Positions 20,250-63,435 of a stretch of 64,000 nt of DNA are shown piece by piece. The first letter of the stretch is position 1. Every line of letters begins with the position of its first letter. The DNA lies in the IMG/VR virus record IMGVR_UViG_3300007352_000001, positions 1 to 64,000 of that record; one strand, given 5' to 3'. Position numbers and translations under genes: made by a program. The notes beneath the pieces are model-generated. The model saw only the letters and a list, made by a program, of their open reading frames with translations, made no database searches and was not told where the DNA came from.

Positions 20250-20639
20250 TTGATCGTGCCGGTCAGTGACATCCGCAAGAATCACAAGGGGCACTTCTTC
20301 GATCGCGACACGATGCGGTTCTTCAAGAGCCGCGCCCATGACCGTTCGTACGAAGGCCCCGGTGGGCACTACTTCGTGACCAGCGAGCAGCAGCCGCGCT
20401 GGGGCGGTGGCCACCAGCGCCGGCACTACAAGGTGCGCAGCTACGACTCTGCGGCTGACCGCATCACCTCCGCGGGCGAGTTCCTCGGCTACAAGACCGC
20501 GCGCCGCGCGCATCGCGCTGCCTCGAAGCTCGCACTCACGCCGCGCAAGATGAAAGTCGCCGAGGCAGCCACTGCGTTGCTTGCCGGGACGCCTGTCGCC
20601 GAAGCGATTACGGCGATCGTCGAGGGCGAGCGCGAGTAG
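20250..20639 (+). CDS. conserved phage protein (HFF...TMRFF.SR type) with C-terminal helical tag
   Basis: AAGGAGG RBS; HFFDRDTMRFFKSR...YFVTSE recalled as a widespread uncharacterised phage domain. Confidence 0.7.
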   Translation: MIVPVSDIRKNHKGHFFDRDTMRFFKSRAHDRSYEGPGGHYFVTSEQQPRWGGGHQRRHYKVRSYDSAADRITSAGEFLGYKTARRAHRAASKLALTPRKMKVAEAATALLAGTPVAEAITAIVEGERE

Positions 20640-20640
20640 C

Positions 20641-24427: not shown

Positions 24428-24862
24428 ATGCCCGCCGCTGACGATCTCCAGGACTCACTCTCCACGACCAAGCGGTTGATGGAAGAGTTCGGGTTCACCA
24501 AAGAAGAGGTCCGGCAGCACTTCGAGAACGTGCAGGCGGACATGCAGCGCATGGGTGAGTCGAACGGGGAGCTTGCGGAGGCCGCTCGCTACCTCGTCGA
24601 CGAACTGCGGAAGGCGTACCCCAAGCGGGTCGGCGACTTCTCGCAGCACGGCCCCGCGTTGCCGGACGACCAGTTGCGGAAGGGGCGAGGGGATGGCGGG
24701 GCGGTACGACTGGTACAGCATTCCGAAGACGATCATTTACCACAACAACTGCCCGGACGGATTCACCGCCGCCTGGGTCGCTCACTCGAAGTTTGGCGAC
24801 CACGACGTCCAGTTCCACCCAGCCAACTTCGGCGAACCGCCGCCCGACGTCGCTGGCCATGA
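24428..24862 (+). CDS. hypothetical protein carrying the RVGDFSQHGPA tag
   Basis: Helical N-terminus; motif at about 24626; 3' part overlaps the DHH gene. Confidence 0.55.
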   Translation: MPAADDLQDSLSTTKRLMEEFGFTKEEVRQHFENVQADMQRMGESNGELAEAARYLVDELRKAYPKRVGDFSQHGPALPDDQLRKGRGDGGAVRLVQHSEDDHLPQQLPGRIHRRLGRSLEVWRPRRPVPPSQLRRTAARRRWP

Positions 24863-25520
24863 CGTCCTGATCGCGGACTTCAGCTACGCGCGCGACGTGC
24901 TCCAACTCTTGCACGGGCGCGCGAACTCGCTGCAGGTCCTCGATCACCACTTCAGCGCGGAGCAAGATCTGCGTGGCCTGCCGTTCTGTGTCTTCGACAT
25001 GGAGCGCAGTGGCGCGGGCCTCACCTGGGACACGCTCTTCCCGGACACGCCGCGGCCGTGGATCGTCGACTACATCGAAGATCACGACCTCTGGCGGTTC
25101 AAGCTGCCAGACTCCAGCGCCGTCCGTGGCTACCTCGGCAGCGTGCCGCGCACCTTCGAGGCCTACGACGCGCTGGTGCAGGTGCCACTCACCGAGGTGA
25201 TCGAGCACGGCCGCACGGTCGAGCGCTACGTCGCCAACCACGTCCGCGAGCTGGTCGACATGTTCGCCCGCCAGGTCGAGTTCGAGGGCATGCGCGTGTG
25301 GGCGATCAACCTGGGCGGACGCCTGGTGAGTGAGACCCTGCATGCGCTGAACGAGCGCTCGGCGGTGTCGGTGGCGTGGTGCCAGAAGCAAGACGGCAAG
25401 TACCTCTACTCGCTGCGGTCCAACGGAGACGTGGACGTGAGCGAACTCGCCCGCCACTACGGCGGCGGGGGCCACCGAACGGCTGCGGGCTTCCGCACAG
25501 ATCGGTGCCTCTGGCTGTAA
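24693..25520 (+). CDS. DHH/DHHA1 phosphoesterase
   Basis: YHNNCPDG, ADFS, LDHH, DHDLW, SLRS, GGGGHRTAAG. Confidence 0.93.
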   Translation: MAGRYDWYSIPKTIIYHNNCPDGFTAAWVAHSKFGDHDVQFHPANFGEPPPDVAGHDVLIADFSYARDVLQLLHGRANSLQVLDHHFSAEQDLRGLPFCVFDMERSGAGLTWDTLFPDTPRPWIVDYIEDHDLWRFKLPDSSAVRGYLGSVPRTFEAYDALVQVPLTEVIEHGRTVERYVANHVRELVDMFARQVEFEGMRVWAINLGGRLVSETLHALNERSAVSVAWCQKQDGKYLYSLRSNGDVDVSELARHYGGGGHRTAAGFRTDRCLWL

Positions 25521-34683: not shown

Positions 34684-36294
34684 ATGTCGGATCCCGTTAC
34701 CTCCCCGCTCCTGCTGGAGGAGACGCGCATCTTCACGCCCCAGATCGTGGAGCGCGCAACGCCCGGTGGTCGTCTGCGACTGCAAGGCATCTACCAGCTC
34801 GGCGAGGTCGTCAACCAGAACAAGCGTCGGTACCCGAACCCGCTCTGGGATCGGTTGCTGGGGGAAGGTTCCGCGTTTCAGAACCGCGTCCGCGCTCGCC
34901 GTGTACTCGGCGAACTCGGGCACCCCAAGGACGGCAAGACGCTCCTCGAACGCGTCTCGCACCTGATCACCAAGACCTGGATCGACCCCAACGGGCGGCG
35001 TGACTGTCTCGCCTGCGAGCAGAGCCTCAACCCCGGCCACTACCACGTCATGGCCGAGGAAGAGGTGCTCAACACGCCGCACGGGAAGATCCTGGGCGAA
35101 CTCTACGAAGCTCAGGTCGAAACCGGCGTTTCCTCGCGTGGCCGCGGCACGCTCGTCCCGATGGGCGAGTACTCCAACGTCAACGACGACTACGCCATGG
35201 AGACCTTTGACCACGTGCTCGATCCGAGCACGCCTGGTGCGATGCCGCGCGTCGTGTCCGAGAACGTCGTCGGCGTCATCTCCCGCTTCGCCAACTGCGA
35301 CGCCACCCCTGCGGAACTGCAGGGGTACCGTTCCATCCTGGCTGAGGTGACCGAATCGGCCGCGCCCGAGATCCGTTCCAACGCCCACGCGGTGATGGAA
35401 GCGATCGAGGTGCGTCTTGCCAACGCGAGTCGTGGACAGGTGCAGTGCTCGGTGCCGGCGTCGGCACCCCTGCTGCACATGTCCGACAGTGATTCTCGCG
35501 TCGAGTCCCCTCTCGCCGCAACCCCAACCCTGGAGGCACGCATGACCATCACCAAGGACCTGCCCGAGGTCCGTGCGATTGTCGCCGAGGCCGTCCGCGA
35601 GCACGAGGCATCGCTCCGCACGCAGTTTGACACCGCCATGTCCGAGATGGTCGCGACGGTGGAGAGCCTGCAGCAGGAGCTGCTCGCGTCGCAGCAGCGC
35701 AATGAGGCTGCTGACCTCGTCGGCAATGAGCTGGTCTCCCAGCTCAAGGAAACGAATCTGAAGCTCACGGCGTACTCGACCGCGAACAGCGGTGGGCATG
35801 ACGTGCTGCAGAAGTTCGACACCGCCAAGGGCGTGATCGAGGAACTCATCGAGCACGTCCGCAGCCTGCGCTACGCCGAGGCCCGCGCCGATGCGGCCGA
35901 GCGTCTCCTCTCCGAGGTGGTCGCTCGCACGCAGCGCGAGCATCTGATGGCGCACGTCGACCGCCTGCTCCAGGTGGTCCCCGAAGAGCACGTCGGCCGC
36001 GTGAAGCCGTTCCTCACCGAGGCGAGCAGCATCGCCGAGGCGAACCGTCGCTTCTCCACCGTCACCGCCGCGCTCATCACCGAGGCGCCGGAGACCGAAC
36101 AGCCGGCCGCGGTGCGTACCGACGGCGCACTCCCGCCGACCGCGGGACACCACGCCGCCGCCCTCACCGAGTCGACCACGCTCGTCGGCACTCCTACCCA
36201 GGGGACGCAGGCCGGGCAGCAGGTCAACGAGAGCGTGAACATCACCCGCGCGATGGTGCGCCGGCTGTCCGGCCGCACCGCCGTCGGCGCGTAA
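34684..36294 (+). CDS. gp21: T4 gp21-type prohead protease fused to a scaffold-like coiled coil
   Basis: NQNKRRYP, GELGHP, LNTPHGKI, GVSSRGRG, FDHVLDPST; coiled-coil C-terminal half; directly upstream of the capsid gene. Confidence 0.9.
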   Translation: MSDPVTSPLLLEETRIFTPQIVERATPGGRLRLQGIYQLGEVVNQNKRRYPNPLWDRLLGEGSAFQNRVRARRVLGELGHPKDGKTLLERVSHLITKTWIDPNGRRDCLACEQSLNPGHYHVMAEEEVLNTPHGKILGELYEAQVETGVSSRGRGTLVPMGEYSNVNDDYAMETFDHVLDPSTPGAMPRVVSENVVGVISRFANCDATPAELQGYRSILAEVTESAAPEIRSNAHAVMEAIEVRLANASRGQVQCSVPASAPLLHMSDSDSRVESPLAATPTLEARMTITKDLPEVRAIVAEAVREHEASLRTQFDTAMSEMVATVESLQQELLASQQRNEAADLVGNELVSQLKETNLKLTAYSTANSGGHDVLQKFDTAKGVIEELIEHVRSLRYAEARADAAERLLSEVVARTQREHLMAHVDRLLQVVPEEHVGRVKPFLTEASSIAEANRRFSTVTAALITEAPETEQPAAVRTDGALPPTAGHHAAALTESTTLVGTPTQGTQAGQQVNESVNITRAMVRRLSGRTAVGA

Positions 36295-36333: not shown

Positions 36334-37860
36334 ATGATCACTGCCAATCTGGTGGAACAGACGAGTGGTCGTGGCCTGAGCGACAACTTCCTGTCGCTGG
36401 GTCGCGTCCTCTCCGAGGAGCGCTGGGCCGACTACTGCAACGACCCCGAGATCCCCATCGCAGAAGACGCGACCCGCTACGGTCTCGCGTGCATGCTGGA
36501 GAATCTCGATCGCTTCCTCGGTCAACTCGACGAGACCACGCGCGCGGTCGCGATCGGCGACTTCCAGAAGTACGCCTTCCCCCTCGTCCGCGCCATCTTC
36601 CCTGAACTCGTCGCGAACAGCCTGGTGTCGGTGCAGCCGATGCTCGGCCCCACGAGCCTGATCTTCTACCTGGACTTCGTCTACGGGACGAACAAGGGCT
36701 CGGTGCGTCGCGGTGACACCGCCTTCTCGGCGGTGGCGCGCGGCCCGAACAACCCATCGTACACCTCGCCGAACGTCGACGAGGAGCAGGTCGCGACTGG
36801 CGACGGCACCACGGTGGCGTTCACCGCGAACATCTCCTTCACCCCGATCGTTCCGTCCTCGATCGTCATCACCGACGGCATCCAGGTCGTGACCGACAAC
36901 GGGGCGGGCGGTGTGACCGGCGACGCGTCGGCCGGCTCGGTCAACTACGCCAACGGGTCGCTGGCCGTCACCTTCAGCTCGGCGCCGTCGTCGGGCACCC
37001 CGATCACCGTGTCGTACACGTACGACATGGAAGCCAACCCCCTCCTGCCGGAGATGGACCTGGTGCTGCAGAGCACCCCGGTCATGGCCCGGCCGCGCAA
37101 GCTCAAGACCAAGTGGTCGCTGGAGGCGGCGTTCAACCTCCGCTCGCTGCATGGTCTGGAGGCTGAGGTCGAGTTGACTTCGGCCGTCGGCAGCGAGATC
37201 CGCTTCGAGATCGACCGCGAGGTCATTCTCGATCTGCAGAAGCTCGCGGGCGCGGGCTCGGTGTTCTGGAACAAGGACCTGCCGCAGGGCGTGTCCTTCA
37301 CCGAGCAGAAGCTGTCGATCATCGACACCTTCGTCACCGCCTCGAACCTCATCCACAAGACGACTGGTCGCGGCACCGCCACCTGGATCCTCGGTGGCGA
37401 GGGCGTGGCCAACGTCATCGAGACTCTGCCCGGCTTCGTGCCGACGCCGGGTCTCCCGAGCGGTCTCGTCAAGGGCGTGTACCGCGCGGGCCGTCTGAAC
37501 GGGCGCTGGGACTTCTTCAAGGACCCGTTCTACACGGACAACTTCTTCATGATGGGCTACAAGGGCATGAGCTTCCTGGAAGCCGGCTACGTGTACGCCC
37601 CGTACATCCCGCTCTACACCACGCCGACGATCGTCCTGGACGACTTCATCGCGCGCAAGGGTCTCGCCACGCAGTACGGCAAGAAGGCGGTGAACCCGCT
37701 CTTCTACGTCACCGGTGAGGTCGACCGCGGTCTCGCTCTGGAGACCAAGGCTGGTGTCGCCGCGGGCACCATCTCGTCGAGCGGTCAGGCCGTCCTGACC
37801 CACGGTTCGGCGAAGGAAGACCTCGGCCTGGCAACGGGCCGCGGCGTCTTCGGCATCTGA
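36334..37860 (+). CDS. gp23: T4 gp23-type major capsid protein
   Basis: LVSVQPMLGPTSLIF, RKLKTKWSLEAA, EIRFEIDREVI, AGYVYAPYIPL, KGLATQYG. Confidence 0.96.
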   Translation: MITANLVEQTSGRGLSDNFLSLGRVLSEERWADYCNDPEIPIAEDATRYGLACMLENLDRFLGQLDETTRAVAIGDFQKYAFPLVRAIFPELVANSLVSVQPMLGPTSLIFYLDFVYGTNKGSVRRGDTAFSAVARGPNNPSYTSPNVDEEQVATGDGTTVAFTANISFTPIVPSSIVITDGIQVVTDNGAGGVTGDASAGSVNYANGSLAVTFSSAPSSGTPITVSYTYDMEANPLLPEMDLVLQSTPVMARPRKLKTKWSLEAAFNLRSLHGLEAEVELTSAVGSEIRFEIDREVILDLQKLAGAGSVFWNKDLPQGVSFTEQKLSIIDTFVTASNLIHKTTGRGTATWILGGEGVANVIETLPGFVPTPGLPSGLVKGVYRAGRLNGRWDFFKDPFYTDNFFMMGYKGMSFLEAGYVYAPYIPLYTTPTIVLDDFIARKGLATQYGKKAVNPLFYVTGEVDRGLALETKAGVAAGTISSSGQAVLTHGSAKEDLGLATGRGVFGI

Positions 37861-37925: not shown

Positions 37926-38264
37926 ATGGATCCAAGCAACAGCGGCGAGTGGATCAAGCTCTTCTCCACGCTCGACATGGGCGTGATGGTCGCCATCGGC
38001 ATCATCGCTCTGATCTGCGAGCGCGCCTCGAAGGTCAACGACGCCATGGCCCTCCTGATCCCGCTCGCTCTCGGCACCGCCTGGGGCATGCTCGAAGCGT
38101 CGCAGCAAGGCTGGGGAGAACCGTACGTGATCGCCAAGGGGGCGCTCATGAACGGCGCCGGTGCCTCAGTCGCCGCGCAGCTCGTCAGCCAGGGCTGGGA
38201 CAAGTTCATCGAGAAGGTCTCAGGCAGCAAGACGACTCCTCCACCGCCACCGCCTGGCGCGTAA
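37926..38264 (+). CDS. holin-like small membrane protein
   Basis: GGAGG RBS; about 3 hydrophobic segments and a charged/Pro tail. Confidence 0.5.
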   Translation: MDPSNSGEWIKLFSTLDMGVMVAIGIIALICERASKVNDAMALLIPLALGTAWGMLEASQQGWGEPYVIAKGALMNGAGASVAAQLVSQGWDKFIEKVSGSKTTPPPPPPGA

Positions 38265-38277
38265 CACCGGACGACCC

Positions 38278-38796
38278 ATGTCGTTCATCAACTGGCTATT
38301 CCAGTCCGACTGGATGCCGCACCGCTACTGTGTGCTCGGCAACCCGTGGCTGGTGTGGCCGCAGGTGATCGCGGACGCCATCATCGCCTTGTCGTTCATC
38401 ACGATGCCCTTCGCGATTGCCCAGTTCGTCAACAAGAACCATGAGAAGCTCGTGGCAGCGGGCATCGGGTTCGTCCGGCTCTTCGCGCTGCTGGAACTGT
38501 TCATGTTCTGTTGCGGCGTCCGGCACCTCGTGCAGGTCTACACCATGTTCGTCGGCGCCTACGTGCTCGATGAGATGGTCACCCTCGTCACCGCCTGCTT
38601 CGCACTCCCCACAGCGGTCGCCGTGTTCTGGGGCGTCTCACGGGCCAACTTCATGTGGGCGGACTCGCTCGTCATCGAGCGGTTGGAACGGGCCATGACC
38701 CGATTGGCGGGGATCATCGTGCGCATTCGTCCGAAGAGCACCATCATTCCACAACCCGACACCATCATCACCCATGAGACGGCCCCCTCCCCATGA
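38278..38796 (+). CDS. stand-alone ethylene-receptor-like membrane sensor domain
   Basis: WMPHRYC..PWLVW..IADAIIALSF..MP; FMFCCGVRHL; 3 TM segments; no kinase domain. Confidence 0.75.
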   Translation: MSFINWLFQSDWMPHRYCVLGNPWLVWPQVIADAIIALSFITMPFAIAQFVNKNHEKLVAAGIGFVRLFALLELFMFCCGVRHLVQVYTMFVGAYVLDEMVTLVTACFALPTAVAVFWGVSRANFMWADSLVIERLERAMTRLAGIIVRIRPKSTIIPQPDTIITHETAPSP

Positions 38797-43238: not shown

Positions 43239-43859
43239 ATGGCGATCCCGGACATCACAGCGATGGGCATCTACGTAGATCACGGGCGCAACCTCCGCGG
43301 AAAGCTGATGGTCGAGCACGGCGCGTGGATCGCGCTCGGCCGTACCAAGTTCGACACGGTCGACTACCCGTGGTCGAACGAAGGCGCGCCGCCGGCCGAG
43401 AGCGCCACCGACGACGAGTTCACCATCGACAACGAGATGACCTCACCGCTCGGCAGTCAGGTGATGGTGCCGTTCAAGAAGGCGACCATCTGCGCGATGG
43501 TGAAGCAGGACGCGGAAGGAACCATCGAGTTCGGTTCGCAGACCTGGAAGGTGTCGACCGAGGCGGACGCCAAGCACATCTACTTCAAGTTCATCATCGA
43601 GCCCGAGGACTTCGAGCCGCTGTCGGGGACACCGCACCAAGGTTTCCCAGCCATCCTCGGCTATCGCCGGCTCGAAGTGCATCTCGGCACGGTGCAGAAC
43701 GCGCAGTTCGCGAGCGATCTCACCTCGCGGCGCAAGCTCGTGCTCGCGACGACTCCTGGCGGCAGTGATCTCGGCCGACTCTTGTTCGTGTCGAATGAGG
43801 TCTTGCAGAACCGACTGCCGGAAGAGCGGCACGTCATCGAGATTCTCCTCCTCGCATGA
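43239..43859 (+). CDS. baseplate wedge-like structural protein (T4 gp8-like N-terminus)
   Basis: WIALGRT...PWSNEGAPP. Confidence 0.55.
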   Translation: MAIPDITAMGIYVDHGRNLRGKLMVEHGAWIALGRTKFDTVDYPWSNEGAPPAESATDDEFTIDNEMTSPLGSQVMVPFKKATICAMVKQDAEGTIEFGSQTWKVSTEADAKHIYFKFIIEPEDFEPLSGTPHQGFPAILGYRRLEVHLGTVQNAQFASDLTSRRKLVLATTPGGSDLGRLLFVSNEVLQNRLPEERHVIEILLLA

Positions 43860-44196: not shown

Positions 44197-44550
44197 ATGG
44201 CGCGGTTTCGCACCCGCACGGAGATCTACCGCGCGGACACGCGCGACCTTGTCAAGCTCGCCATCTGGCAAGGCTTCGCAGAAGTCGACCAGACGCAGGA
44301 TCTGCAGCTGGTGCTCCCGATGTCGGGCAGCACCGTCACGCTCGACCCGGCCAACTACGGCATGACGCGGTTCGAGGAAGTGTACCTGGAGAGCGAGCAG
44401 GAGATCACCGTCACGCTCGAAGGGACCACGACCGCCGAGCTGCAGCTCGAACAGATGCTCATCCTGCGCGGCACCGACATCGCCTCGATCACGCTGTTCA
44501 GCGCGTGGCCGGTCGAGACCAGGGTGCACGTCATCCTGGGAGGCAGCTGA
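44197..44550 (+). CDS. small beta-rich putative structural protein
   Basis: GGAGG RBS; TRVHVILGGS end. Confidence 0.6.
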   Translation: MARFRTRTEIYRADTRDLVKLAIWQGFAEVDQTQDLQLVLPMSGSTVTLDPANYGMTRFEEVYLESEQEITVTLEGTTTAELQLEQMLILRGTDIASITLFSAWPVETRVHVILGGS

Positions 44551-45107
44551 TGTACACGCCCCAGGGCCTCACCTGGGTCTCGGCAGGCCAGCGTGATGCC
44601 CAAGGGCGCCTGCGCCGCGGCACGGTGCCGTGGGATTCCGTGAAGCCGATTCGGTACAAGAACCCGATCGGCCCCCACACCACCGCTGTGCGGCACACGA
44701 TCTTGATCCGCGATCATCACTTCGGTGGTCCTACCGGGACACCTAACACGCTCGGGTTCGGCGGGAGCCTTGGCCCGGTGACGCGCAAGGACATTGGCCG
44801 AACCCTCACCGTCGACAAGCTGCCTGACGGGCGGTGGATCGACCACATCAGCACGGAGAAAGCTGTGGCACAAACCCGAGTTGGTGACGCGAGTCGCCGT
44901 GGTTCCGATTGGAAGAAGCGCAACGAGGCAGTCGAAGAGAACTTCGGCGCGATCTATCACCACCACTTCGCCGTCCCGGCCACGGGCATCTCGGCGCAGC
45001 GGCCGTGGTCGCGTCAGGACTTTCGCGACTACTACCAACAGCACCCCGATCTGCCGCAGCTCGTCGGTGACGAACTCGCAGAGCAGATCCGGAAGGTCTT
45101 CGAGTAA
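44550..45107 (+). CDS. hypothetical protein with RVGDASRRG motif
   Basis: TGATG coupling; motif at 44877. Confidence 0.6.
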   Translation: MYTPQGLTWVSAGQRDAQGRLRRGTVPWDSVKPIRYKNPIGPHTTAVRHTILIRDHHFGGPTGTPNTLGFGGSLGPVTRKDIGRTLTVDKLPDGRWIDHISTEKAVAQTRVGDASRRGSDWKKRNEAVEENFGAIYHHHFAVPATGISAQRPWSRQDFRDYYQQHPDLPQLVGDELAEQIRKVFE

Positions 45108-45124: not shown

Positions 45125-47773
45125 ATGAGCATGAGCAACTGGTACACGGACCGCCTGAACGACGTGTCGGCGATTCGCCAGGCACACTACGGGCGCACCG
45201 ATCACGGCCGGCCGTTTCAGGTGAACGAGTCGGTGCAGCTCACCGCACGTGTGGTCACTGAGAGCGCAACGCTGCCACCCTACATCACCGGCCGCGTCAC
45301 GTCGCTCGATGAACACGGCGTGACGGTCGACTTCAGTGGCTACGGCAAGCAGCGTCTCGGCGAGGCCGTCGCGCGCGACTTCCTGGTCGGCTACCGGAAC
45401 CACACCCCGGTCGACGTCCTGTCGCGCATGATGGGCAAGGGGCCGAACAAGCTCCACGAGTTCAAGGTTGGCGACACGGTCACCGACCGCCACGGGGCGG
45501 CGTTGGTGATCGAGCGCATCGACCCGAACACGCAGACGGCGATGCTGACCGACGGCTCGCACCTCTACCCGCGGCCGATCCGCGAGTTGAAGCTGGCGGG
45601 AGGCGGCGCCGCGATCGGCGGCGGCAAGGTGGTCGCCGAGCGTGGCAAGCAGGGCAACGGCAAGCAAGGCACTCTGCAGGAAGAGGGCGAGCGCCAGACC
45701 GTTGGGTCCGACGGGATCGCGCCAGGCACGAAGGTGCGCGTCACGAGCATCGACCCGATGTTCAACCAGTGGCGCCGGTTCGCTGTGCAGCAAGGCGAAG
45801 CGGAAGGCATCGTCGGCCAGGAAGGCACCGTGATCGCCGCGATGTACCCGACGGGCGTCGGGGCCGGTGGGCAGTCGCAGGGCGAGACGATGTACCGCGT
45901 ACTCTTCCCGTTCGGCGGCAAGAAGGACCTCTCGGCGAAGGAACTCGCCATGGGGGGAATGGGCGGTGACGGCCTCGTTCGCGAGTCCGTGAACCGGGGG
46001 TTGCTTCGGCGCCCCGGCCAGCGCCCGATCGACGAATCGCTCCTAGAGGAAGGATCGGCGTTCAGTCGCCGGCACTACGAGCGCATCGCGGACCTGATCC
46101 GCGAGTCGAGCATCCCCGAGAACGATCGACACGAGATCGTGCAGAGCTTCGGCCGCACGTTCATGAACGACAATCCCTACTACGACCACGCGCGGTTCGC
46201 CTCGCGCGTGCACAACGACATGGAAGGGGCCGGTCGGCAGTCGCGCCAGGGCATCACGGCGACGCCGACGCAGCGCCACTTCGTCGAGGTGGCGCGCACG
46301 CTGCGCGAGGCGCACATCAACCAGGACTCGCGCAACAAGCTGGTCCAGGCGTTCGGTCGGCACTTCAGCGGCCTCAACGAGCGCTACAAGCACCACGTCT
46401 TCCACAAAGCCGCTGGTGGGGTCGGGGATCCGATGGCCGGGCTGCACGAGGCCGGTGGGGTGACCCAAGGCTCAGTCATTCGCCAGCCGAAGCCGGTGAC
46501 CGACAAGTCGGTCAAGGCGGCGACCAAGCCGCGGGCAATGGCGTCGAAGATCGGGCAGACCGTCAAGACCGGCGGCACGGGCGGGGTCGTGGTCGGCGAA
46601 GAGAAGGGGCTGCTCAAGGTGCTGACCGACGATGGGCGGCAGGTCTTCGTCAACGAGTCGGTGCTGATGGCGCCGGCCGGTGGCCAGGCTCGCTGGACCC
46701 CTCCGCAGACCGAGTACAACGCGCCGCCCATCGCGCTCGCGGTCGGCTCGACCATCAACTTCGATGGCCGCTCGGGCGTCGTGGTCGAGGCCGGTCCCGC
46801 CTCGTGCCGCGTCCTGATGGACAACGGTGAGGACCTCCGTGTCGCCACCCGCTCGCTCGCCCTCGCCGAGGGTGAGAAGCCGGCGTTCTTGAAGGACAAG
46901 GACGACGACAACGACGACTCGGGTTCCAAGAAGAAGGACGAGAAGTCGGGGTCCAAGGACAAGTCCGGCTCCAAGGACAAGGACGACGACGAAGACGAGG
47001 ATGAGGACGACGACAAGAAGGACGAGAGCGTCGGCATGATGGCGCCGCAGTCGATGGGCCTCACCGCACCGTCGCTCGCACGTCCGGCTGGCGCCGCCCA
47101 AGCCCTCGAAGGTCAGACGATCGACGTCGCTGGGCAGCCGGCGATGATCCTCGGATTCACCAAGTTCAACCAGGCCGGGCAACCGACCGAGGCCCGCGTC
47201 GCCTACGAAGGCGGCAAGGAAGGGCTCGTCACGCTCGCAGAGAAGCGCGTGGACGAGTCGATGCAACTCGCCAAAGGGCTGACTCGCCGGCTCATGCGGG
47301 CGGACAACGCTGCGCGTGTGAGCGCGCAGAGCGGCACGGTCGACCGCCAGGTCGCCCAGGTCGCCGCCCGTCTGCGCCCAGTCAGCGAGAACAACCATCG
47401 CGCCCGCGCGGTCGACCTCGACCAGAGCAACGCGCTGGCGATGTCCGCGATCCAGCCGAACGGCCAGATCGTGAACCCGGAGATGGCCCAAGCGCTCGCC
47501 ATGGTGCAAACCAAGCTCGGCAACTCGCCGGCCGTCAAGCAGGCGGAAGGTGTCCTCGCTGGCGTGCGCCAGCCGGGCGCGGCATCGCCCAAGGCGATGA
47601 GCGAGGAGCAACTCAGCGAGGAGCGTCGCCGCGCGCTCACACGCGGCCTCGTGCGCAGCGTGAAGGAAGGCAAGGGCTTCAGCCCCTCGCGGCCGATCGT
47701 CACCTCGACGGGCACGGCCGTCACCGAAGACGTGCTCGCCGGGGCGCAGTTTGTCCCGAACACCGAGATCTGA
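45125..47773 (+). CDS. large multi-module protein (several KOW/SH3-like barrels, a duplicated helical domain, many hydrophobic-x-E sites); candidate prohead-core polyprotein
   Basis: GGAGG RBS; FKVGDTV, IAPGTKVRV, KIGQTV, LAVGSTI, LEGQTI starts; VNES/VTES/VRES/IDES/VDES; D/K-rich stretch. Confidence 0.75.
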   Translation: MSMSNWYTDRLNDVSAIRQAHYGRTDHGRPFQVNESVQLTARVVTESATLPPYITGRVTSLDEHGVTVDFSGYGKQRLGEAVARDFLVGYRNHTPVDVLSRMMGKGPNKLHEFKVGDTVTDRHGAALVIERIDPNTQTAMLTDGSHLYPRPIRELKLAGGGAAIGGGKVVAERGKQGNGKQGTLQEEGERQTVGSDGIAPGTKVRVTSIDPMFNQWRRFAVQQGEAEGIVGQEGTVIAAMYPTGVGAGGQSQGETMYRVLFPFGGKKDLSAKELAMGGMGGDGLVRESVNRGLLRRPGQRPIDESLLEEGSAFSRRHYERIADLIRESSIPENDRHEIVQSFGRTFMNDNPYYDHARFASRVHNDMEGAGRQSRQGITATPTQRHFVEVARTLREAHINQDSRNKLVQAFGRHFSGLNERYKHHVFHKAAGGVGDPMAGLHEAGGVTQGSVIRQPKPVTDKSVKAATKPRAMASKIGQTVKTGGTGGVVVGEEKGLLKVLTDDGRQVFVNESVLMAPAGGQARWTPPQTEYNAPPIALAVGSTINFDGRSGVVVEAGPASCRVLMDNGEDLRVATRSLALAEGEKPAFLKDKDDDNDDSGSKKKDEKSGSKDKSGSKDKDDDEDEDEDDDKKDESVGMMAPQSMGLTAPSLARPAGAAQALEGQTIDVAGQPAMILGFTKFNQAGQPTEARVAYEGGKEGLVTLAEKRVDESMQLAKGLTRRLMRADNAARVSAQSGTVDRQVAQVAARLRPVSENNHRARAVDLDQSNALAMSAIQPNGQIVNPEMAQALAMVQTKLGNSPAVKQAEGVLAGVRQPGAASPKAMSEEQLSEERRRALTRGLVRSVKEGKGFSPSRPIVTSTGTAVTEDVLAGAQFVPNTEI

Positions 47774-48470: not shown

Positions 48471-49079
48471 GTGTGGTTGCTGGGCCTCGCGGCCTGGTTC
48501 TTCCTGTGCGAGCCGGCGTGGGCACAAGAGCCTACGCCGGCTCCAACAGGTGCCGCCGCAGAATACGACCGCAGCGCGTGGCCGCTGTGGACTGATGAAG
48601 ATCGAGATCGGGAGGACGCGCGCACGGAGGTGCTGATTCGCGACTCACTGATCCCGCCGCGCGTGTTCGTGAACAACCGCGGCAACCGATTGGTCAGCGA
48701 GGGCGTGTGGGTCTGTCCCTACACTGGACAGGTCATGACCGACCCGCGCCAACTCGACATCGACCACATGGTACCGCTCGGCTACGCGTTCCACGCGGGC
48801 GGCAAGGACTGGACGCGTGAGCAGCGCCAGGCCTATGCGAACTGGCTCCAAGATCCGAATCACCTGAAAGCGGTGAGCGCCTCAGCCAATCGCTCGAAGA
48901 GCGATCAAGGTCCGGCCGAGTGGAAGCCGCCGCTGAAGACGACCTGGTGCGAGTACGCGATTGCGTTCGCGGAGGTCGCGACCACGTGGCACTTGACGTT
49001 GCCGCCGGCTGATGCGCATGCGATCGTCGAGATGATCGCGACCTGCCCGCTCTCCAACCGGTGGGATCTCCGCGAGTAA
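48471..49079 (+). CDS. secreted HNH-type nuclease (DUF1524-like)
   Basis: Signal peptide; CPYTG, DIDHMVPL, AVSASANRSKSDQGP.EW.PP..WCEYA. Confidence 0.85.
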   Translation: MWLLGLAAWFFLCEPAWAQEPTPAPTGAAAEYDRSAWPLWTDEDRDREDARTEVLIRDSLIPPRVFVNNRGNRLVSEGVWVCPYTGQVMTDPRQLDIDHMVPLGYAFHAGGKDWTREQRQAYANWLQDPNHLKAVSASANRSKSDQGPAEWKPPLKTTWCEYAIAFAEVATTWHLTLPPADAHAIVEMIATCPLSNRWDLRE

Positions 49080-49242: not shown

Positions 49243-50037
49243 CTAGGCGACGACCCGATCGACGCGCTTCACGGGCGCATCAACGGCGTAGAGCGGTGAC
49301 AAGTGCCGCGGCTTCATGGTCGCGATGAAGTGCTCGCGCCAGCCGCGGGCAAACGCATCGAGATCCTCGATCGACTGCACCACGAGCTGTCCGTGCGCCG
49401 CGTGCCGGATGCTGGTGCGCACCACCTGCTGCGCCAGCTCGTGCGCTTCGCTCCAGGTCGCCGTGCGGCCGAGGTAGGTGTCGATGCGCTCCCAGAGCTG
49501 CTCGCGCTTCTCGGGGGGAATCACCCGAGCGTGTCGATCCAAGGCTGAGGCCGACCGGATGGCCTTGCCGCGGGTGCGGTCCTCCTCGGAGACGTCCTCG
49601 ACCGGCGCGCCAGGCTTCGGGATGTTCAGTGCCGCGGCGATCTCACAGCGGCGCTGATGGGCGAGCTGCTCGTAGCGCTCGTGGCAGTCGACACAGAGCG
49701 CGACGACGTCGTACGAGTTTCGAGAGCCCAGGCGGTTGGGAAACCACCGCCGGTAGCAGTACGGCACGATGTGGTGCTTGGTGAGCCGCTCAGTGACTCC
49801 ACAGACGGCGCAGTGGTTCGCCCGCGGCAAGAGCATGTAGGCGTTGCCCTTGTCGCCCGGACCGTTCGGCTCGAAGGTGAGCCGGATCTGCTTGTCGCCG
49901 ACGTACTCGGCGAGGTTGTTGCGCAGGTAGAAGTTCACCTTGCGCTGTGATGCTCGACACAATGGCTCCCCCTCACGGGTGAGGATCAACCAGTTGTCGA
50001 ACAGGACCCCCCGCCTCGCCTTCAACCGCCACCGCAT
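49243..50037 (-). CDS. HNH-like protein resembling the EXD2 C-terminal domain
   Basis: G.PLC....K..FY, RLTFEP, CAVCG, HHIVPYCYRRWFP, NSYDVVALCVDCH, HG..VV, WREHF..MKPRHL. Confidence 0.75.
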   Translation of the reverse strand: MRWRLKARRGVLFDNWLILTREGEPLCRASQRKVNFYLRNNLAEYVGDKQIRLTFEPNGPGDKGNAYMLLPRANHCAVCGVTERLTKHHIVPYCYRRWFPNRLGSRNSYDVVALCVDCHERYEQLAHQRRCEIAAALNIPKPGAPVEDVSEEDRTRGKAIRSASALDRHARVIPPEKREQLWERIDTYLGRTATWSEAHELAQQVVRTSIRHAAHGQLVVQSIEDLDAFARGWREHFIATMKPRHLSPLYAVDAPVKRVDRVVA

Positions 50038-52194: not shown

Positions 52195-52379
52195 TGGACT
52201 CTGGGACGACCTATAAGCGTGGCCCTGCCCGCACCGGTGGTGAACAAGACGTGATCTCGCGCCGCTGGCGCAAGATGCTCTGCTACTGCGTCCGCACGGG
52301 CGTCACGGCGAAGATCAAGCGCGGCATCCGCCGCCGCGAACGCCGCGAGGGGCGGCACGAGGCACAGAGCGAATGGTAA
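52194..52379 (+). CDS. small basic hypothetical protein
   Basis: TGATG coupling; Arg-rich. Confidence 0.55.
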   Translation: MDSGTTYKRGPARTGGEQDVISRRWRKMLCYCVRTGVTAKIKRGIRRRERREGRHEAQSEW

Positions 52380-52966
52380 ACGAACGCTTCTTCGATCGCT
52401 CCGGGCCAGATGGGCTCGAAGGTGGGCAGGGCGGGGTCGCTGGCGGCTCTCCTAACTCCGAGTTCTCCGGTGGTGGCGCGAACAGCCAAGCCGGTCGTTG
52501 TCCGAGCTGCAACGCCAACTTCCCAGTCGACGATCCGAACCGGACGACGTTCTGCCCTGAGTGCGGGCAGCAGCGGCAGGGCGTGGTGGCGACGGCGGCA
52601 GCCCAGCAGCGCGGCGGGTGGGGCGTCTACGGCACTGGCCGGCCGGGCTATCTGCGTGTACCGGGCGGGCCGATCTCGACCAATGAAATGGCCGGCAAGC
52701 TCCGGCTCAAGTATCTCGGCGGCAATCTCTTCGAGATGGAGATGCAGGGCGCGACGCTCGAACACGCGCTCTCATCGTCGCACTCGGTGATGTCGCATCG
52801 CCTGCGGGCTCTTGGTATGAACCAGGATCGCGTGATGCAGACGCTGATCCACTGGCTCTTCAACGAGGCCAAGGCGGGACAGGAGTACGTGTGGGATCTC
52901 GCAGGCGGCACGCGTATGGTGGTCGACGAACGCGGTTTTCGTCGCCACGTCGAAGTTTCGGAATAA
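52373..52966 (+). CDS. zinc-ribbon hypothetical protein
   Basis: CPSC...CPECG. Confidence 0.65.
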   Translation: MVNERFFDRSGPDGLEGGQGGVAGGSPNSEFSGGGANSQAGRCPSCNANFPVDDPNRTTFCPECGQQRQGVVATAAAQQRGGWGVYGTGRPGYLRVPGGPISTNEMAGKLRLKYLGGNLFEMEMQGATLEHALSSSHSVMSHRLRALGMNQDRVMQTLIHWLFNEAKAGQEYVWDLAGGTRMVVDERGFRRHVEVSE

Positions 52967-53715: not shown

Positions 53716-55266
53716 ATGCCCATGGACGCTTCGCCCTACCAAGCTCAAGGACCGGGTGACCCGAGCGCAGGCGCGGGGCCTCCGGCGTCGCAGAATCCGC
53801 CGCCGCCAGGCCCACCACAGGTCCCTGGGGCGCCGGATCCGCGCATGCAGCCGTTTGGGCAGCAGGCGTCGCCCGGCAACTTCCTGCAGCAGATCCGACA
53901 GTTCTCGGCGGACTGTGCCCAGGTCGAAGAGATCGTCACCGAGCTGCAGAAGCTCCTGCTGCAGATCAAGATGTCGATGCCGCCCGATCGCGTCGAGGCC
54001 ACGACCCAGGCGATGGGGCAGCTGCTCGCGGCGCAGTCTGGGCTCACCGGTGCTCGCATGGTGCTGGAGATGGCCACGATGCCGCAGCAGCAAGCCGGTG
54101 CCGGCGGTGGCGGTGTGCGAGAGGACAAGACGCCCGAGCCGACGACGTTCACCGCGCTTGTCGAACAGGCGGGCAAAGCAAAGTTCGGCCTGCCTCATGC
54201 GCCGCGGCGCTACACCTGCCAGGACTGCGGCCAAGAGCAGAAGATCTCGACCAACCACACCGACGACGTATCGGACTACTGCCGCGGCTGTTCGTGGAAG
54301 CCGTCGTTCGGCAAGACGGGCCACAACATCCCCGCGCTCGGTGGGCATACCTACCGCCGCTTCTCCTACGTCGGTGAACTGAAGGAATCCGCCGATGACA
54401 TCGAGCGCACGCTCGGGGTTGGTCGCTACGCTCGGCCGCAGACCGCCGCTGATCGCAAGCTCATCCGCGACTTCCTGGCGCCGAACACGACGGCAACGGC
54501 AGATGCATGGGCACGCCGGCCGGCCGGTCCGGTGACCACGCACGCCCGCTCGCCGTTCCAGCTGTCGATCCAGAAGACCGCCCTCGGGAAGAAAGGCGGC
54601 GTGCACGAAGCGCTCGCGACGACCTCGCACCACATGAGCGGGGGCGGTGGCACCGCGACGCAGACGCTCACCATCCCTGAGCGCGAGTACCAGATCCGCG
54701 AGTTCACTGACGGGCCGGTCACCCGTTACGAGCTGTCGCGCATCGGCAATGACCTACGGGCGCAGGTGCCGATCTACGTGTTCCATGACCAGAAGACCGG
54801 CGCGTGGAAGTCGACGCTTTTCCAGGAAGACGACGGAGGCGGCGATCGCCACGCCGAGCTGGTGAAGCGCTGGCTCTTCCAGGGCCGGCCGGCACGCATC
54901 ACCGACGCCATGGAACCGGTTGGCGGCTCGCCGCCAGCGTGGCCGTTCATGGACAACGACGGCTACGAGCGGCCAGGCTTCCACTCGACCCAGCGGCCGG
55001 TGGGAATCCCCGATCCAGGTCCGGGCCAGGGGCACTATGCCGAGTCGTCGTTCGGCGCGCTTGTTGACGAGACCAAGCGGTTCTCGAAGAGCGAGGTGGT
55101 GGCGTCGCTGCGCCAGCACGCACAGGACATCCGCGACGGCAAGATCAAGACGCGCTCGCCGAACGATGAGCCGCACACCATCATTGGCCCCGACGGCAAG
55201 CCGCACATCCCTCGTGGCCGTGTCGGGGCTGCCTCGCGCGTGCGCGTGAAGAAAGGCCGCGTATGA
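53716..55266 (+). CDS. multi-module protein (Pro/Gln-rich N-terminus, zinc ribbon, FxALV[DE] linkers, C-terminal GRVGAASR)
   Basis: GGAGG RBS; CQDC...CRGC; VRED, LKES, VHEA linkers. Confidence 0.7.
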   Translation: MPMDASPYQAQGPGDPSAGAGPPASQNPPPPGPPQVPGAPDPRMQPFGQQASPGNFLQQIRQFSADCAQVEEIVTELQKLLLQIKMSMPPDRVEATTQAMGQLLAAQSGLTGARMVLEMATMPQQQAGAGGGGVREDKTPEPTTFTALVEQAGKAKFGLPHAPRRYTCQDCGQEQKISTNHTDDVSDYCRGCSWKPSFGKTGHNIPALGGHTYRRFSYVGELKESADDIERTLGVGRYARPQTAADRKLIRDFLAPNTTATADAWARRPAGPVTTHARSPFQLSIQKTALGKKGGVHEALATTSHHMSGGGGTATQTLTIPEREYQIREFTDGPVTRYELSRIGNDLRAQVPIYVFHDQKTGAWKSTLFQEDDGGGDRHAELVKRWLFQGRPARITDAMEPVGGSPPAWPFMDNDGYERPGFHSTQRPVGIPDPGPGQGHYAESSFGALVDETKRFSKSEVVASLRQHAQDIRDGKIKTRSPNDEPHTIIGPDGKPHIPRGRVGAASRVRVKKGRV

Positions 55267-61741: not shown

Positions 61742-63313
61742 TCACTCGGTCAAATACGCACGGAAGCGTATGCGATCGCCGTACACCACTTCGAGTTCGT
61801 GCCCGTCGGGCCAGCGCTCTTCTGCGCGCGGTGCCCACGGCAGATACCGACCGAGGAAGAAGAACGCCGCTGGCGGGGTGACATCGCCCCAGGCGCCATC
61901 CTCGGCCGCACGAAACTCGCGCGATCGGTCCCGTGCATCCAAATCCCCAGCAAGGAAGCGGAGCGTCTCGTAGTGCACGCTCCAGCGGTCGGAGAAGAAG
62001 TTGACCTGCGTGCCCGCCGGCAAGGTGACCACCTGCTCGGCGAAGAGCCGCAGTTCGGGTGCAAAGACGTGCTCGGCCTCTTCGGTCTTGAGCGACGCCG
62101 GGTAACGCAAGATGTCCACCGCGGCACTGAGAGCGAGAATCGCCCCGAGCGCGGCCGTCCACTGGTAGCGCTTGGAGTGCCACAAGGCGCCGAGCGGCAG
62201 CGCCGCCAGGAACGCGATGAACGGCGCGAGCGCCAGCGTGCGTCGGAAGTCGCCGTTGCCAGTGGTCAGGATCGCTCCCCACGGGAAGATCAAGACAGCT
62301 GCGCAGCAGACGGCGCACGCCCAGTCGAACCGGCGATGCCAAGCCAGCACGAAGCCGACAGCGGCGGCGATCGAGATCAGTGGGTTGATCGGTGGGAAGC
62401 CTGGACTGGACAGGCCGTCACCGAAGTCTGGGCGCCCGCCAGCGAGAAGCCCAACAACGAACTTCCCTAGCTCGGCGATGATGAGCGCCACGCGCTCCCA
62501 CCAGTGCGCCGCGGCCAGCCACTCCTCGGACGTGAAGATCATCAGGCCGGAAGCGCGGTTGAAGTACTGCTGTGGGTTCTCGACCGCATACAAGATCATC
62601 GGCACCACCGCGGTGCTCACCGCCACCGCGAAAATGGTCGCCCGCGCCAGGTAGCGATCAGACGGCTCACGGATTTTCGCCAGCACGAACATAGCCGCGT
62701 AGAGCGCAAAGGTGAGTGGATAGGCGTTGTACGTGTAGATCCCCAAGCCTGCGAGGAACCCCGCGGCCAGGGACAGCCCTGGGTGCGCACGGGTACGCAG
62801 CGCGTAGGTGAGCACGATGCAGGTCGCCAGCATCACCAGCGGCCAACTCGCCACCATGTAGCCGGTGCGGCTCAGGTGGAAGTGCCACGGCATGCACGCC
62901 AGCAGGAAGGCGGCGATGGTCGCCTGTGGGCGTGAGAACCAGAGCAACCCGAGCACGTAGGTGAGCACCACCGTGGCGATACCGAGGACCGCGATCGCCC
63001 CACGCAGCGTCGTCATCGAGACACCGAAGACAGAGAAGACGGCGGCGACCCAGTAGAGCGGCCCGGCCGGTTGCCCCAGTCCGCTGGGGTAGACGTAGGG
63101 ACCGATCCAGCCTTCGTCGAGGATGCGCTGGGCATCGAGCCCGGTGAGCGCCTCATCGCCGTGGAGACCGAACGGCACGTCGCCGATCCCCACCAAGCGG
63201 ACCAGTGCGGCGAAGACCGCCACCACCAGCCCCAGGCTGATGGTCAGCGCCCGCTCCCGCGTCGCCGTCGCCACCCCTGCCTGCGCCGGGGCGGCGGCAA
63301 CCCGAAACATCAT
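61742..63313 (-). CDS. GT-C fold membrane glycosyltransferase (GT39/ArnT-like)
   Basis: LVRL..G.VP.GLHGDEA, many TM segments, PWHFHLSR, GIYTY. Confidence 0.85.
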   Translation of the reverse strand: MMFRVAAAPAQAGVATATRERALTISLGLVVAVFAALVRLVGIGDVPFGLHGDEALTGLDAQRILDEGWIGPYVYPSGLGQPAGPLYWVAAVFSVFGVSMTTLRGAIAVLGIATVVLTYVLGLLWFSRPQATIAAFLLACMPWHFHLSRTGYMVASWPLVMLATCIVLTYALRTRAHPGLSLAAGFLAGLGIYTYNAYPLTFALYAAMFVLAKIREPSDRYLARATIFAVAVSTAVVPMILYAVENPQQYFNRASGLMIFTSEEWLAAAHWWERVALIIAELGKFVVGLLAGGRPDFGDGLSSPGFPPINPLISIAAAVGFVLAWHRRFDWACAVCCAAVLIFPWGAILTTGNGDFRRTLALAPFIAFLAALPLGALWHSKRYQWTAALGAILALSAAVDILRYPASLKTEEAEHVFAPELRLFAEQVVTLPAGTQVNFFSDRWSVHYETLRFLAGDLDARDRSREFRAAEDGAWGDVTPPAAFFFLGRYLPWAPRAEERWPDGHELEVVYGDRIRFRAYLTE

Positions 63314-63435
63314 GGTCGGCGCGTAGCATACCTCTTCAGCTTTTGTCCAGCACCACCTCACCACCCCACCACACTGACGGCACCGGTCGTCATTAACCGC
63401 GGCCTTTTTGTGAGCCGCGAAGCGAGGTCACCCGC

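What the first reader, a model, noticed from the sequence alone, without database searches (positions are those of the whole stretch)
45125..47773. 882-aa beads-on-a-string protein punctuated by gp21-type cleavage sites
Seen: at least five KOW/SH3-like barrels; a tandem duplicated helical domain (SRRHYERIADLIRE..IVQSFGRTF..DNPYYDHARF / TQRHFVEVARTLRE..LVQAFGRHF..LNERYKHHVF); a D/K-rich stretch; and about 20 hydrophobic-x-E sites (VNES twice, VTES, VRES, IDES, LHEA, LAEG, VDES, LSEE), many at module borders. Inference: a prohead-core polyprotein cut into small proteins during head maturation.
Basis: partly seen in the sequence, partly recalled or inferred. Interest (0 to 1): 0.6.

Follow-up and report, generated by a model that had tools for sequence, protein, structure and literature searches.

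The report
Phage head polyprotein with many cut sites
An 882-residue protein of an uncultured 241-kb T4-like phage is a string of small folded modules whose linkers are packed with the recognition motif of the phage's own head-maturation protease, so it is most likely loaded into the immature head and cut into many small pieces there.

Summary
ORF 45125-47773 (+) is a real gene. A structure model shows six SH3/KOW/Tudor-like barrels, a tandem-duplicated three-helix unit, an acidic D/K-rich stretch and disordered linkers.

It has 29 [LIVM]-x-E motifs against 12 expected (z 5.8). The excess is specific to this spacing and to Glu. It lies mainly in linkers and tails (19 against 6.4 expected).

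The phage encodes one T4 gp21-type (Peptidase_S77) protease and a gp23-type capsid protein. Among 256 ORFs of the genome, only two are outliers for the motif: this protein and the protease-scaffold fusion. In T4 the same statistic picks gp22 and gp21 as the top two.

Homologues keep at least one site in nearly every linker, although the positions drift.

Best reading (confidence about 0.68): a prohead-core protein cut at many sites by the prohead protease. Cleavage, head location and the fate of the pieces are inferred, not shown. The family has no Pfam or PHROG match and no relative in cultured phages.

I rate it a new variant of a known kind, of moderate interest.

The parts
45125..47773 (+). 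Whole gene, 882 aa (P0001), about 95 kDa. It is single-copy in the 241-kb genome.
45125..45229 (+). N-terminal amphipathic helix (residues 6-22), ending at the conserved (V/M)-N-E|S site (residues 33-36). It may be a removable leader.
   Evidence: Model. N34, E35 and S36 are invariant in the three close homologues. h-x-E stands at this column in 10 of 24 family members.
45230..45433 (+). Barrel 1 plus a short helix (residues 36-103). The linker site L-H-E|F (110-112) follows.
45461..45589 (+). Barrel 2 (residues 113-155). It is followed by a disordered linker (160-191) with sites at P1 154, 172 and 186.
45698..45958 (+). Barrel 3 with a helical insert (residues 192-278). This ends the family-defining N-module. 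The next linker (279-308) holds sites at P1 287, 304, 308 and 309.
46052..46420 (+). Tandem-duplicated three-helix unit (residues 310-432). A single unit occurs elsewhere as a free-standing phage protein of about 60 aa. The site L-H-E|A (440-442) follows.
46544..46666 (+). Barrel 4 (residues 474-514), ending in V-N-E|S (509-512).
   Evidence: It is 35% identical to barrel 5.
46736..46870 (+). Barrel 5 (residues 538-582), ending in L-A-E|G (580-583).
46871..47044 (+). Disordered acidic D/K/E-rich stretch (residues 583-640, net charge -11).
   Evidence: Similar stretches occur in relatives P0004, P0005 and P0019.
47102..47242 (+). Barrel 6 (residues 660-706), ending in L-A-E|K and V-D-E|S (704-712).
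47243..47770 (+). Basic C-terminal tail with low-confidence helices (residues 707-882). It has sites at P1 755, 827, 832, 848 and 868 and a conserved basic helix around 838-851.
34684..36294 (+). Prohead protease, the presumed cutting enzyme. A Peptidase_S77 domain (about residues 1-190) is fused to a scaffold-like helical extension. This is the only other genome-wide outlier for the motif (30 against 12.4 expected, z 6.2).
36334..37860 (+). Gp23-type major capsid protein. It has candidate propeptide sites at residues 42-44, 54-56 and 65-67.

Best explanation
P0001 is a late, head-associated 'beads-on-a-string' precursor. It is incorporated into the prohead core and then cut in trans by the phage's single gp21-type (Peptidase_S77) serine protease, after Glu in hydrophobic-x-Glu motifs.

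The accessible motifs sit at the borders of almost every module. Maturation would therefore remove a 35-residue N-terminal leader. It would also break the 95-kDa chain into roughly 10-18 pieces of 0.5-15 kDa: individual barrels, the helical tandem, an acidic peptide and basic tail peptides.

What is shown:
- the gene and its modular fold;
- the specificity, statistics and linker location of the motif;
- the presence of the protease, with the T4 His and Ser motifs kept in the alignment;
- the same motif signature in the protease-scaffold fusion and in T4 gp22 and gp21;
- retention of linker sites across the family.

What is inferred:
- entry into the prohead;
- actual cleavage;
- the protease's specificity, taken from T4 by homology;
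- the fate of the fragments, either expelled like gp22 pieces or kept as internal or ejected proteins.
For: 1. The enzyme is present. There is one Peptidase_S77 gene. It aligns with T4 gp21 with the His-containing and Ser-containing motifs conserved. The phage also has a Gp23-type capsid protein and a T4-type portal.

2. The motif is in excess. [LIVM]-x-E is 29 against 12.0 +/- 3.0. Only the i,i+2 spacing with Glu is enriched. D, K, R or Q in place of Glu and other spacings are not.

3. Genome-wide, among 256 ORFs, the two outliers are the protease-scaffold fusion (z 6.1) and P0001 (z 5.8). The next ORF is at 3.9.

4. Calibration in T4. Among 221 ORFs the top two are gp22 (z 4.9) and gp21 (z 3.2 to 4.1). 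These are known to be cut at many L/I-x-E sites (PMC9026906). Noise reaches about z 3.5.

5. Location of the sites. Outside the folded cores there are 19 sites against 6.4 expected (z 5.8). Of the non-core Glu residues, 58% have L/I/V/M at P3. Eight of ten interdomain linkers of P0001 hold a site.

6. Family conservation. Homologues P0002, P0003 and P0021 show the same excess. Linker sites shift in position, but each linker keeps at least one. In 24 distant N-module relatives (15-30% identity), h-x-E recurs at the same linker columns, for example 13 of 24 at residue 186. Proteins that share only the helical unit show no excess.

7. Context. The gene is conserved in a late structural block running gp13-like, BW3TFN, this gene, gp15-like, sheath.
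Against: - There is no direct evidence of cleavage or of head location.
- The gene lies among neck and tail-terminator genes, not beside the protease and capsid genes.
- There is no sequence similarity to any known T4 core or internal protein.
- Ten of the 29 motifs lie inside folded barrels or helices. Some of these are conserved structural positions that inflate the raw count.
- The helixA|helixB linker and the acidic|barrel-6 linker of P0001 lack a strict [LIVM]-x-E.
- The protease's specificity is assumed from T4 and was not measured.
- The test for binding between the scaffold part and the N-module gave no answer.
Confidence: 0.68

Rival explanations
1. It is the same substrate, but purely an auxiliary scaffold or core-filling protein, analogous in function to gp22. 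The pieces have no later role and leave the head before DNA packaging.
For: - The motif density and z-score resemble T4 gp22 and the phage's own scaffold-like extension. They do not resemble single-site substrates such as gp23, gp24 or the internal proteins.
- The minimal family members are just the three-barrel N-module, so that module has a function of its own.
- The predicted fragments are small (0.5-15 kDa) and mostly not basic.
- According to PMC9026906, T4 core fragments mostly exit the head.
Against: - The modules are compact folded barrels, unlike helical scaffolds.
- The C-terminal content varies between relatives: helical tandem, LRV repeat, zinc ribbon, acidic runs. This looks more like exchangeable cargo than a size-determining scaffold.
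- The helical unit exists as an independent small phage gene elsewhere.
Confidence: 0.3
2. It is an uncleaved virion structural protein of the neck, collar or head exterior, such as a flexible fibre or decoration. The h-x-E excess would then be a structural or binding feature unrelated to the protease.
For: - The gene lies between gp13-like neck genes and the gp15-like tail-sheath stabiliser and sheath genes.
- Arrays of small barrels on flexible linkers are common in surface and adhesion proteins.
- Several h-x-E positions are conserved inside barrels.
Against: - This does not explain why the excess is strongest in disordered linkers.
- It does not explain why it is specific to Glu at i+2.
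- It does not explain why the only other outlier among 256 ORFs is the unrelated, helical protease-scaffold protein.
- It does not explain why the statistic picks exactly gp22 and gp21 in T4.
Confidence: 0.15
3. It is a tail tape-measure protein.
For: It is a long protein in the late gene block upstream of the sheath. Small overlapping ORFs lie just upstream (44197-44550 and 44505-45107), faintly reminiscent of tail chaperones.
Against: - The model is mostly beta-barrels and disorder, not a long helix.
- In the window it is followed by variable small ORFs and nuclease genes, and in all loci then by the gp15-like and sheath genes. It is not followed by hub or baseplate genes.
- Family members range from 241 to 907 aa within one syntenic slot.
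- A protease-site excess is not expected for a tail protein.
Confidence: 0.03
4. It is a non-virion nucleic-acid or chromatin-type binding protein. KOW, Tudor and SH3-like barrels often bind RNA, DNA or peptides. It would act in the infected cell, and the motif excess would be incidental.
For: The fold matches SPT5 KOW arrays and Tudor/Agenet arrays.
Against: - The matches are at fold level only. There is no NGN domain, and Pfam KOW scores are below threshold.
- The gene is in a late structural context.
- This does not explain the motif pattern.
Confidence: 0.04

Closest known systems
T4 prohead core proteins cut by gp21 at many sites (gp22, gp67, gp68) and the protease gp21 itself
   Same: - The protease family is the same (Peptidase_S77), with the His and Ser motifs kept in the alignment.
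- The short hydrophobic-x-Glu motif is the same, at high density.
- The genome-wide statistical signature is the same.
- The T4 proteins are cleaved into multiple fragments during maturation (PMC9026906).
   Different: - There is no sequence or fold relationship. gp22 is helical, while this protein is a chain of SH3-like barrels plus a helical tandem.
- It is three times longer than gp22.
- It is encoded away from the protease-capsid cluster.
- Valine and methionine at P3 are as frequent as leucine and isoleucine.
T4 internal proteins (IPI, IPII, IPIII, Alt) with an N-terminal capsid targeting sequence
   Same: - An N-terminal leader ends in a hydrophobic-x-Glu site: (V/M)-N-E|S at residues 33-36, invariant in the close homologues.
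- The content downstream varies between relatives.
- The concept of cargo released inside the head is shared (PMC9026906).
   Different: - The leader is 35 residues, not 10, and is not similar in sequence.
- In several relatives the module is not N-terminal.
- There are many internal sites rather than one or two.
- No known effector activity is present.
Processed head, inner-body and ejection proteins of giant phages (phiKZ gp175 substrates; SPN3US gp245 substrates such as gp53 and gp54)
   Same: - The setting is a jumbo phage with a gp21-related protease that cuts after Glu.
- Long regions are cut at several sites.
- A large protein mass lies inside the head (PMC10052503, PMC9026906).
   Different: - Those proteases prefer small residues (A/S/G) at P3. 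Here [SAG]-x-E is depleted, 8 against 16 expected.
- In those phages the multi-cut part is an N-terminal propeptide ahead of one mature domain. It is not a whole chain of modules.
- There is no homology.
Polyvalent proteins of phages and conjugative elements (Iyer et al. 2017, PMC5512222)
   Same: Both are multidomain proteins encoded among virion genes, proposed to be packaged and split into separate functional units.
   Different: - Polyvalent proteins carry enzymatic or effector domains, usually with an embedded peptidase (MPTase) for self-processing.
- This protein has no recognisable enzyme or peptidase domain.
- It would be cut in trans by the prohead protease.
SPT5/NusG KOW arrays and Tudor/Agenet arrays
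   Same: The fold and the beads-on-a-string layout of small barrels are shared.
   Different: - There is no NGN domain and no family-level sequence match. KOWx_SPT5 scores 17.8 bits against a cut-off of 20.
- The resemblance is in architecture only.

Membership tests
Substrates of a T4-type (Peptidase_S77) prohead protease | The phage encodes an S77 protease with the catalytic His and Ser. | tested here: met
   Pfam PF03420, E 9e-13. It is the only copy in the genome. Alignment with T4 gp21 keeps the LGEL-x-HP and GVSSRG motifs.
Substrates of a T4-type (Peptidase_S77) prohead protease | Hydrophobic-x-Glu motifs at accessible positions, in excess for multi-site substrates. | tested here: met
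   - 29 sites against 12.0 expected.
- 19 against 6.4 expected outside the folded cores.
- Specific to Glu and to the spacing.
- Top two of 256 ORFs, together with the protease-scaffold fusion.
- The T4 control picks gp22 and gp21.
Substrates of a T4-type (Peptidase_S77) prohead protease | The protein is present in proheads and found as fragments in mature heads. | not testable with these tools
   The phage is uncultured (an IMG/VR record). No cultured relative carries the gene.
T4 internal proteins with a capsid targeting sequence | A short N-terminal leader ending in L/I-x-E that is necessary for head incorporation. | tested here: inconclusive
   A conserved N-terminal helix is followed by (V/M)-N-E|S at residues 33-36. 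The site is kept in only 10 of 24 relatives. In several relatives the module is internal or C-terminal. The targeting function is not testable here.
gp22-type scaffolding core protein | A helical, coiled-coil protein encoded next to the protease and the capsid gene. | tested here: not met
   The model is mainly barrels and disorder. The gene is 7 kb downstream of the capsid gene. The scaffold-like helical segment is instead fused to the protease.
Polyvalent proteins (PMC5512222) | Several enzymatic or effector domains plus an embedded processing peptidase. | tested here: not met
   No Pfam or PHROG family passes threshold. There is no peptidase domain. Only the late-gene context is shared.
Tail tape-measure proteins | A long, mostly helical protein encoded between the tail chaperones and the hub or baseplate genes. 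| tested here: not met
   Secondary structure. Neighbours. Family lengths range from 241 to 907 aa.
KOW / SPT5-NusG family | An NGN domain and KOW sequence motifs at family threshold. | tested here: not met
   KOWx_SPT5 scores 17.8 bits, below the cut-off of 20, and there is no NGN domain. The match is at fold level only.

The most novel reading that the evidence does not exclude
This is a true phage head polyprotein: one 95-kDa precursor is carried into the prohead by its conserved N-module. The gp21-type protease then cuts it in trans at linker sites. This releases about ten stable small proteins that stay with the DNA and are ejected into the host. They would include SH3-like barrels and a three-helix unit that other phages encode as a free-standing gene of about 60 aa. 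The mechanism would be a modular way of packaging exchangeable small effectors, distinct from both the T4 targeting-sequence proteins and the self-processing polyvalent proteins.
Probability: 0.3. Interest if true: 0.75.

Novelty: new variant of a known kind. Interest (0 to 1): 0.55.

Why it matters
Head maturation by gp21-type proteases is well studied in T4, phiKZ and SPN3US. There the known substrates are helical scaffolds, propeptides and single-domain internal proteins.

A chain of folded mini-domains with protease sites kept in its linkers would add a polyprotein strategy to phage head assembly. It would also define a family seen so far only in metagenomes: about 28 clusters share the N-module and about 75 share the helical unit.

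The work also yields a simple predictor. The genome-wide z-score of the protease motif recovers gp22 and gp21 in T4. It could be used to nominate multi-site protease substrates in uncultured T4-like phages.

If the fragments are ejected, the helical unit and the barrels become candidates for small host-directed proteins.

Tried and rejected
- Family scans of P0001 and of 20 relatives found nothing above threshold in Pfam or PHROGs.
- Searches of cultured-phage genomes found no match: megablast and tblastn with P0001, P0004 and P0019.
- IMG/VR pattern scans found nothing with P0001. The 22-sequence alignment had no stretch conserved enough to search with. The three-sequence profile returned only the contig already known.
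- Foldseek of the helical tandem against the PDB gave no match at E <= 0.001. Function remains unknown.
- The complex prediction of the scaffold-like part of the protease protein with the N-module returned 'no answer'. It is not used as evidence either way.
- A shared basic C-terminal motif (T-R-[GA]-[LM]-V-R) occurs in P0001 and the protease-scaffold protein. I wrote the pattern after seeing both sequences, and the local alignment score is exceeded by unrelated ORFs. I dropped it as evidence.
- The idea that the fragments are basic DNA-condensing proteins is not supported. Most barrels are neutral to acidic.
- A simple test of whether sites fall in pLDDT<50 segments showed no enrichment by residue share. 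I worked this out: 10 of 29 sites against 36% of residues. The proper test shuffles composition within each class, and it does show enrichment.
- Contexts of free-standing helical-unit genes were uninformative.
- The exact capsid propeptide site could not be fixed. There are three candidates, at residues 42-44, 54-56 and 65-67.
Full report
**Setting**

The window is the first 64 kb of a 241,426-bp virus record with direct terminal repeats, rated complete. Its G+C content is 65%.

The region around the finding is a late structural block on the + strand:
- a Peptidase_S77 (T4 gp21-type) protease fused to a long helical extension (34684-36294, 536 aa);
- a Gp23-type major capsid protein (36334-37860);
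- a gp13-like neck protein;
- a BW3TFN-family protein (43239-43859);
- small conserved ORFs;
- the gene in question (45125-47773);
- after some variable small ORFs and two HNH-type nuclease genes, a gp15-like tail-sheath stabiliser, a Phage_tail_S protein and the tail sheath.

The capsid protein finds thousands of T4-like phages, at identities below 40%. A T4-type portal lies at 173.7 kb. The S77 protease is the only one in the genome. Its alignment with T4 gp21 keeps the His-containing and Ser-containing motifs.

**The observation**

The ORF is real: 882 aa with GC3 0.89.

An AlphaFold2 model from a 50-sequence alignment has mean pLDDT 67, but that average hides two classes of residues. 450 residues are at pLDDT 70 or more and 322 are below 50. 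The confident parts are:
- an N-terminal helix (6-22);
- six small beta-barrels (36-89, 118-155, 200-276, 479-514, 543-578, 665-703);
- two three-helix repeats (315-363, 383-429).

Disordered linkers lie between them. The D/K-rich stretch (about 583-640) is disordered, and the C-terminal 170 residues form low-confidence helices.

Foldseek places the barrels with SPT5 KOW arrays, Agenet/Tudor arrays and SH3-like domains. The Atlas comparison agrees. Barrels 4 and 5 are recognisable sequence repeats, and the two helical repeats align over 45 residues. A separate model of the helical tandem reaches pLDDT 89.

**The motif**

All listed sites exist. Counting [LIVM]-x-E gives 29 sites against 12.0 +/- 3.0 in composition-preserving shuffles. 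With a small residue after the Glu, the count is 14 against 3.4.

The excess is narrow in kind:
- [LIVM]-E, [LIVM]-xx-E and [LIVM]-xxx-E are not enriched.
- [LIVM]-x-D, -K, -R and -Q are not enriched.
- [SAG]-x-E, the phiKZ/SPN3US type, is depleted.

I split the chain into folded cores (430 residues) and the rest (452 residues) and shuffled within each class. The non-core part holds 19 sites against 6.4 expected (z 5.8). The cores hold 10 against 5.5 (z 2.2). Of the non-core Glu residues, 58% have L, I, V or M two positions before them, while the frequency of these residues there is 19%.

Eight of the ten interdomain linkers contain at least one site. The exceptions are the short linker between the two helical repeats and the junction between the acidic stretch and barrel 6.

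**Is the motif the protease's?**

Three lines of evidence bear on this.

First, I scored 256 ORFs of the whole genome in the same way. Two stand apart: the protease-scaffold fusion (30 sites against 12.4 expected, z 6.1) and P0001 (z 5.8). The third is at 3.9, and the mean is 0.4 with SD 1.2. The two outliers are unrelated in fold, so a shared structural cause is unlikely. The capsid protein is not enriched. That fits a single-propeptide substrate, and it has candidate sites at residues 42-44, 54-56 and 65-67, ahead of the conserved fold.

Second, I ran a positive control in T4, where the protease cuts after L/I-x-E and cuts the core proteins into multiple fragments (PMC9026906). Among 221 T4 ORFs the top two are gp22 (z 4.9) and gp21 (z 3.2 to 4.1). 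Inh, gp68 and gp23 are also in the upper tail. Unrelated proteins reach at most about 3.5, namely I-TevI and DNA ligase. The statistic therefore picks out multi-site substrates, and P0001 scores above every T4 protein.

Third, conservation:
- The word-index search found two homologues (41% and 37% identity) in syntenic metagenomic contigs.
- Both, and the more distant P0021, show the excess.
- In the three-way alignment the sites at residues 33-35, 110-112, 184-186, 307-309, 509-511 and 709-711 are conserved.
- In the poorly conserved linkers the sites move, but every linker in every homologue keeps at least one. A 55-residue insertion in P0003 brings its own I-G-E sites.
- Across 24 N-module relatives at 15-30% identity, h-x-E recurs at the same columns in the linkers before barrel 2 and before barrel 3. 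At residue 186 it is present in 13 of 24, and at the next site in 10 of 20.
- Proteins that share only the helical unit have no excess.

**Relatives and modules**

A profile search of 1.84 billion representatives gave 106 hits that fall into two independent sets.

- About 28 proteins of 241-738 aa carry the three-barrel N-module. In some it stands alone. In some it follows an N-terminal extension. In others it is followed by different C-terminal parts: acidic runs, an LRV repeat or a zinc ribbon.
- About 75, mostly small, proteins carry one or two copies of the helical unit. A single unit matches free-standing phage proteins of about 60 aa with unknown function. There is no fold match in the PDB.

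None of these proteins has a Pfam family. No cultured phage has the gene.

**Mechanism proposed**

The protein is made late, enters the prohead core, and is cut by the S77 protease at accessible hydrophobic-x-Glu sites. Using the 18 sites at or outside module borders, the products would be:
- a 35-residue leader;
- barrel fragments of 4.7 to 10.6 kDa;
- a 15-kDa helical tandem;
- a 13-kDa acidic fragment carrying barrel 6;
- basic tail peptides.

Whether they leave the head like most gp22 fragments or remain as internal or ejected proteins is open. The motif density argues for gp22-like breakdown. The folded, exchangeable modules argue for released products.

**What weakens the case**

- Nothing here shows cleavage or head location.
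- The gene lies among neck and tail-terminator genes.
- Some in-barrel motifs are conserved structural positions.
- The protease specificity is taken over from T4.
- The complex test gave no answer.

**Comparison with known systems, and verdict**

The protein works like a T4 multi-site core substrate. It has an internal-protein-like leader, and conceptually it resembles polyvalent proteins (PMC5512222) and the processed head proteins of giant phages (PMC10052503). It is not a member of any of these families by sequence, fold or architecture.

I file it as a new variant of a known kind. Confidence in the multi-site-substrate reading is about 0.68. The stronger polyprotein reading, with stable and possibly ejected products, is at about 0.3.

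Only genetic code 11 was used. No reads tool was used.

Noticed in passing
window 34684-36294 (+): The prohead protease is a fusion. The S77 domain (about residues 1-190) is followed by some 345 residues of helical, scaffold-like sequence full of h-x-E sites. It ends in Q-V-N-E|S, the same tetrapeptide that occurs twice in P0001. No separate gp22-like gene lies between the protease and the capsid gene.
   Followed up: partly
window 53716-55266 (+): A 516-aa protein with a P/Q-rich N-terminus is third in the genome for the motif (z 3.9). It is a conserved neighbour in all related loci (L002, L003, L004). It may be another protease substrate, but its score is close to the noise level seen in T4.
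   Followed up: partly
window 38161-38796 (+): A 211-aa ORF just after the capsid gene matches Pfam ETR1_N, the N-terminal membrane domain of ethylene receptor 1 (E 3.7e-16). That is unexpected inside a head-neck gene block.
   Followed up: no
window 48471-49079 (+) and 49243-50037 (-): Two HNH-type nuclease genes (GH-E/HNH_4, and PHROG HNH endonuclease) and several small ORFs sit between P0001 and the next conserved gene (52373-52966). Related contigs lack them, so they look like mobile insertions in the structural block.
   Followed up: partly
window 20581-22344 (+): Residues 133-293 of this 587-aa protein match a domain found in very large phage proteins. These are annotated as endolysin, DarB-like antirestriction protein or minor head/virion protein (PHROG E down to 4e-43). 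It may be a virion-associated enzyme domain.
   Followed up: no
window 24555-25520 (+): A DHH phosphoesterase family protein (phrog_4771, E 2e-81).
   Followed up: no
relatives P0006, P0008, P0009, P0014 (N-terminal extensions): Several N-module relatives begin with an M-G/S-Y-F/L start. They carry a conserved h-x-E-G-(H/F)-G-A-I-x-H-x-Y-Y-G-Q-N segment upstream of the module. This looks like another conserved putative cleavage site and leader.
   Followed up: no
window 47636-47677 and 36244-36276: P0001 (residues 838-851) and the protease-scaffold protein (C-terminus) both have a basic T-R-[GA]-[LM]-V-R helix. This could be a shared shell-binding motif, but I wrote the pattern after seeing both sequences and the similarity is not statistically significant.
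   Followed up: partly
window 61742-63364 (-): A 540-aa ORF on the opposite strand, next to the sheath gene, has a weak PMT_2 (membrane glycosyltransferase) match, just below the Pfam cut-off.
   Followed up: no
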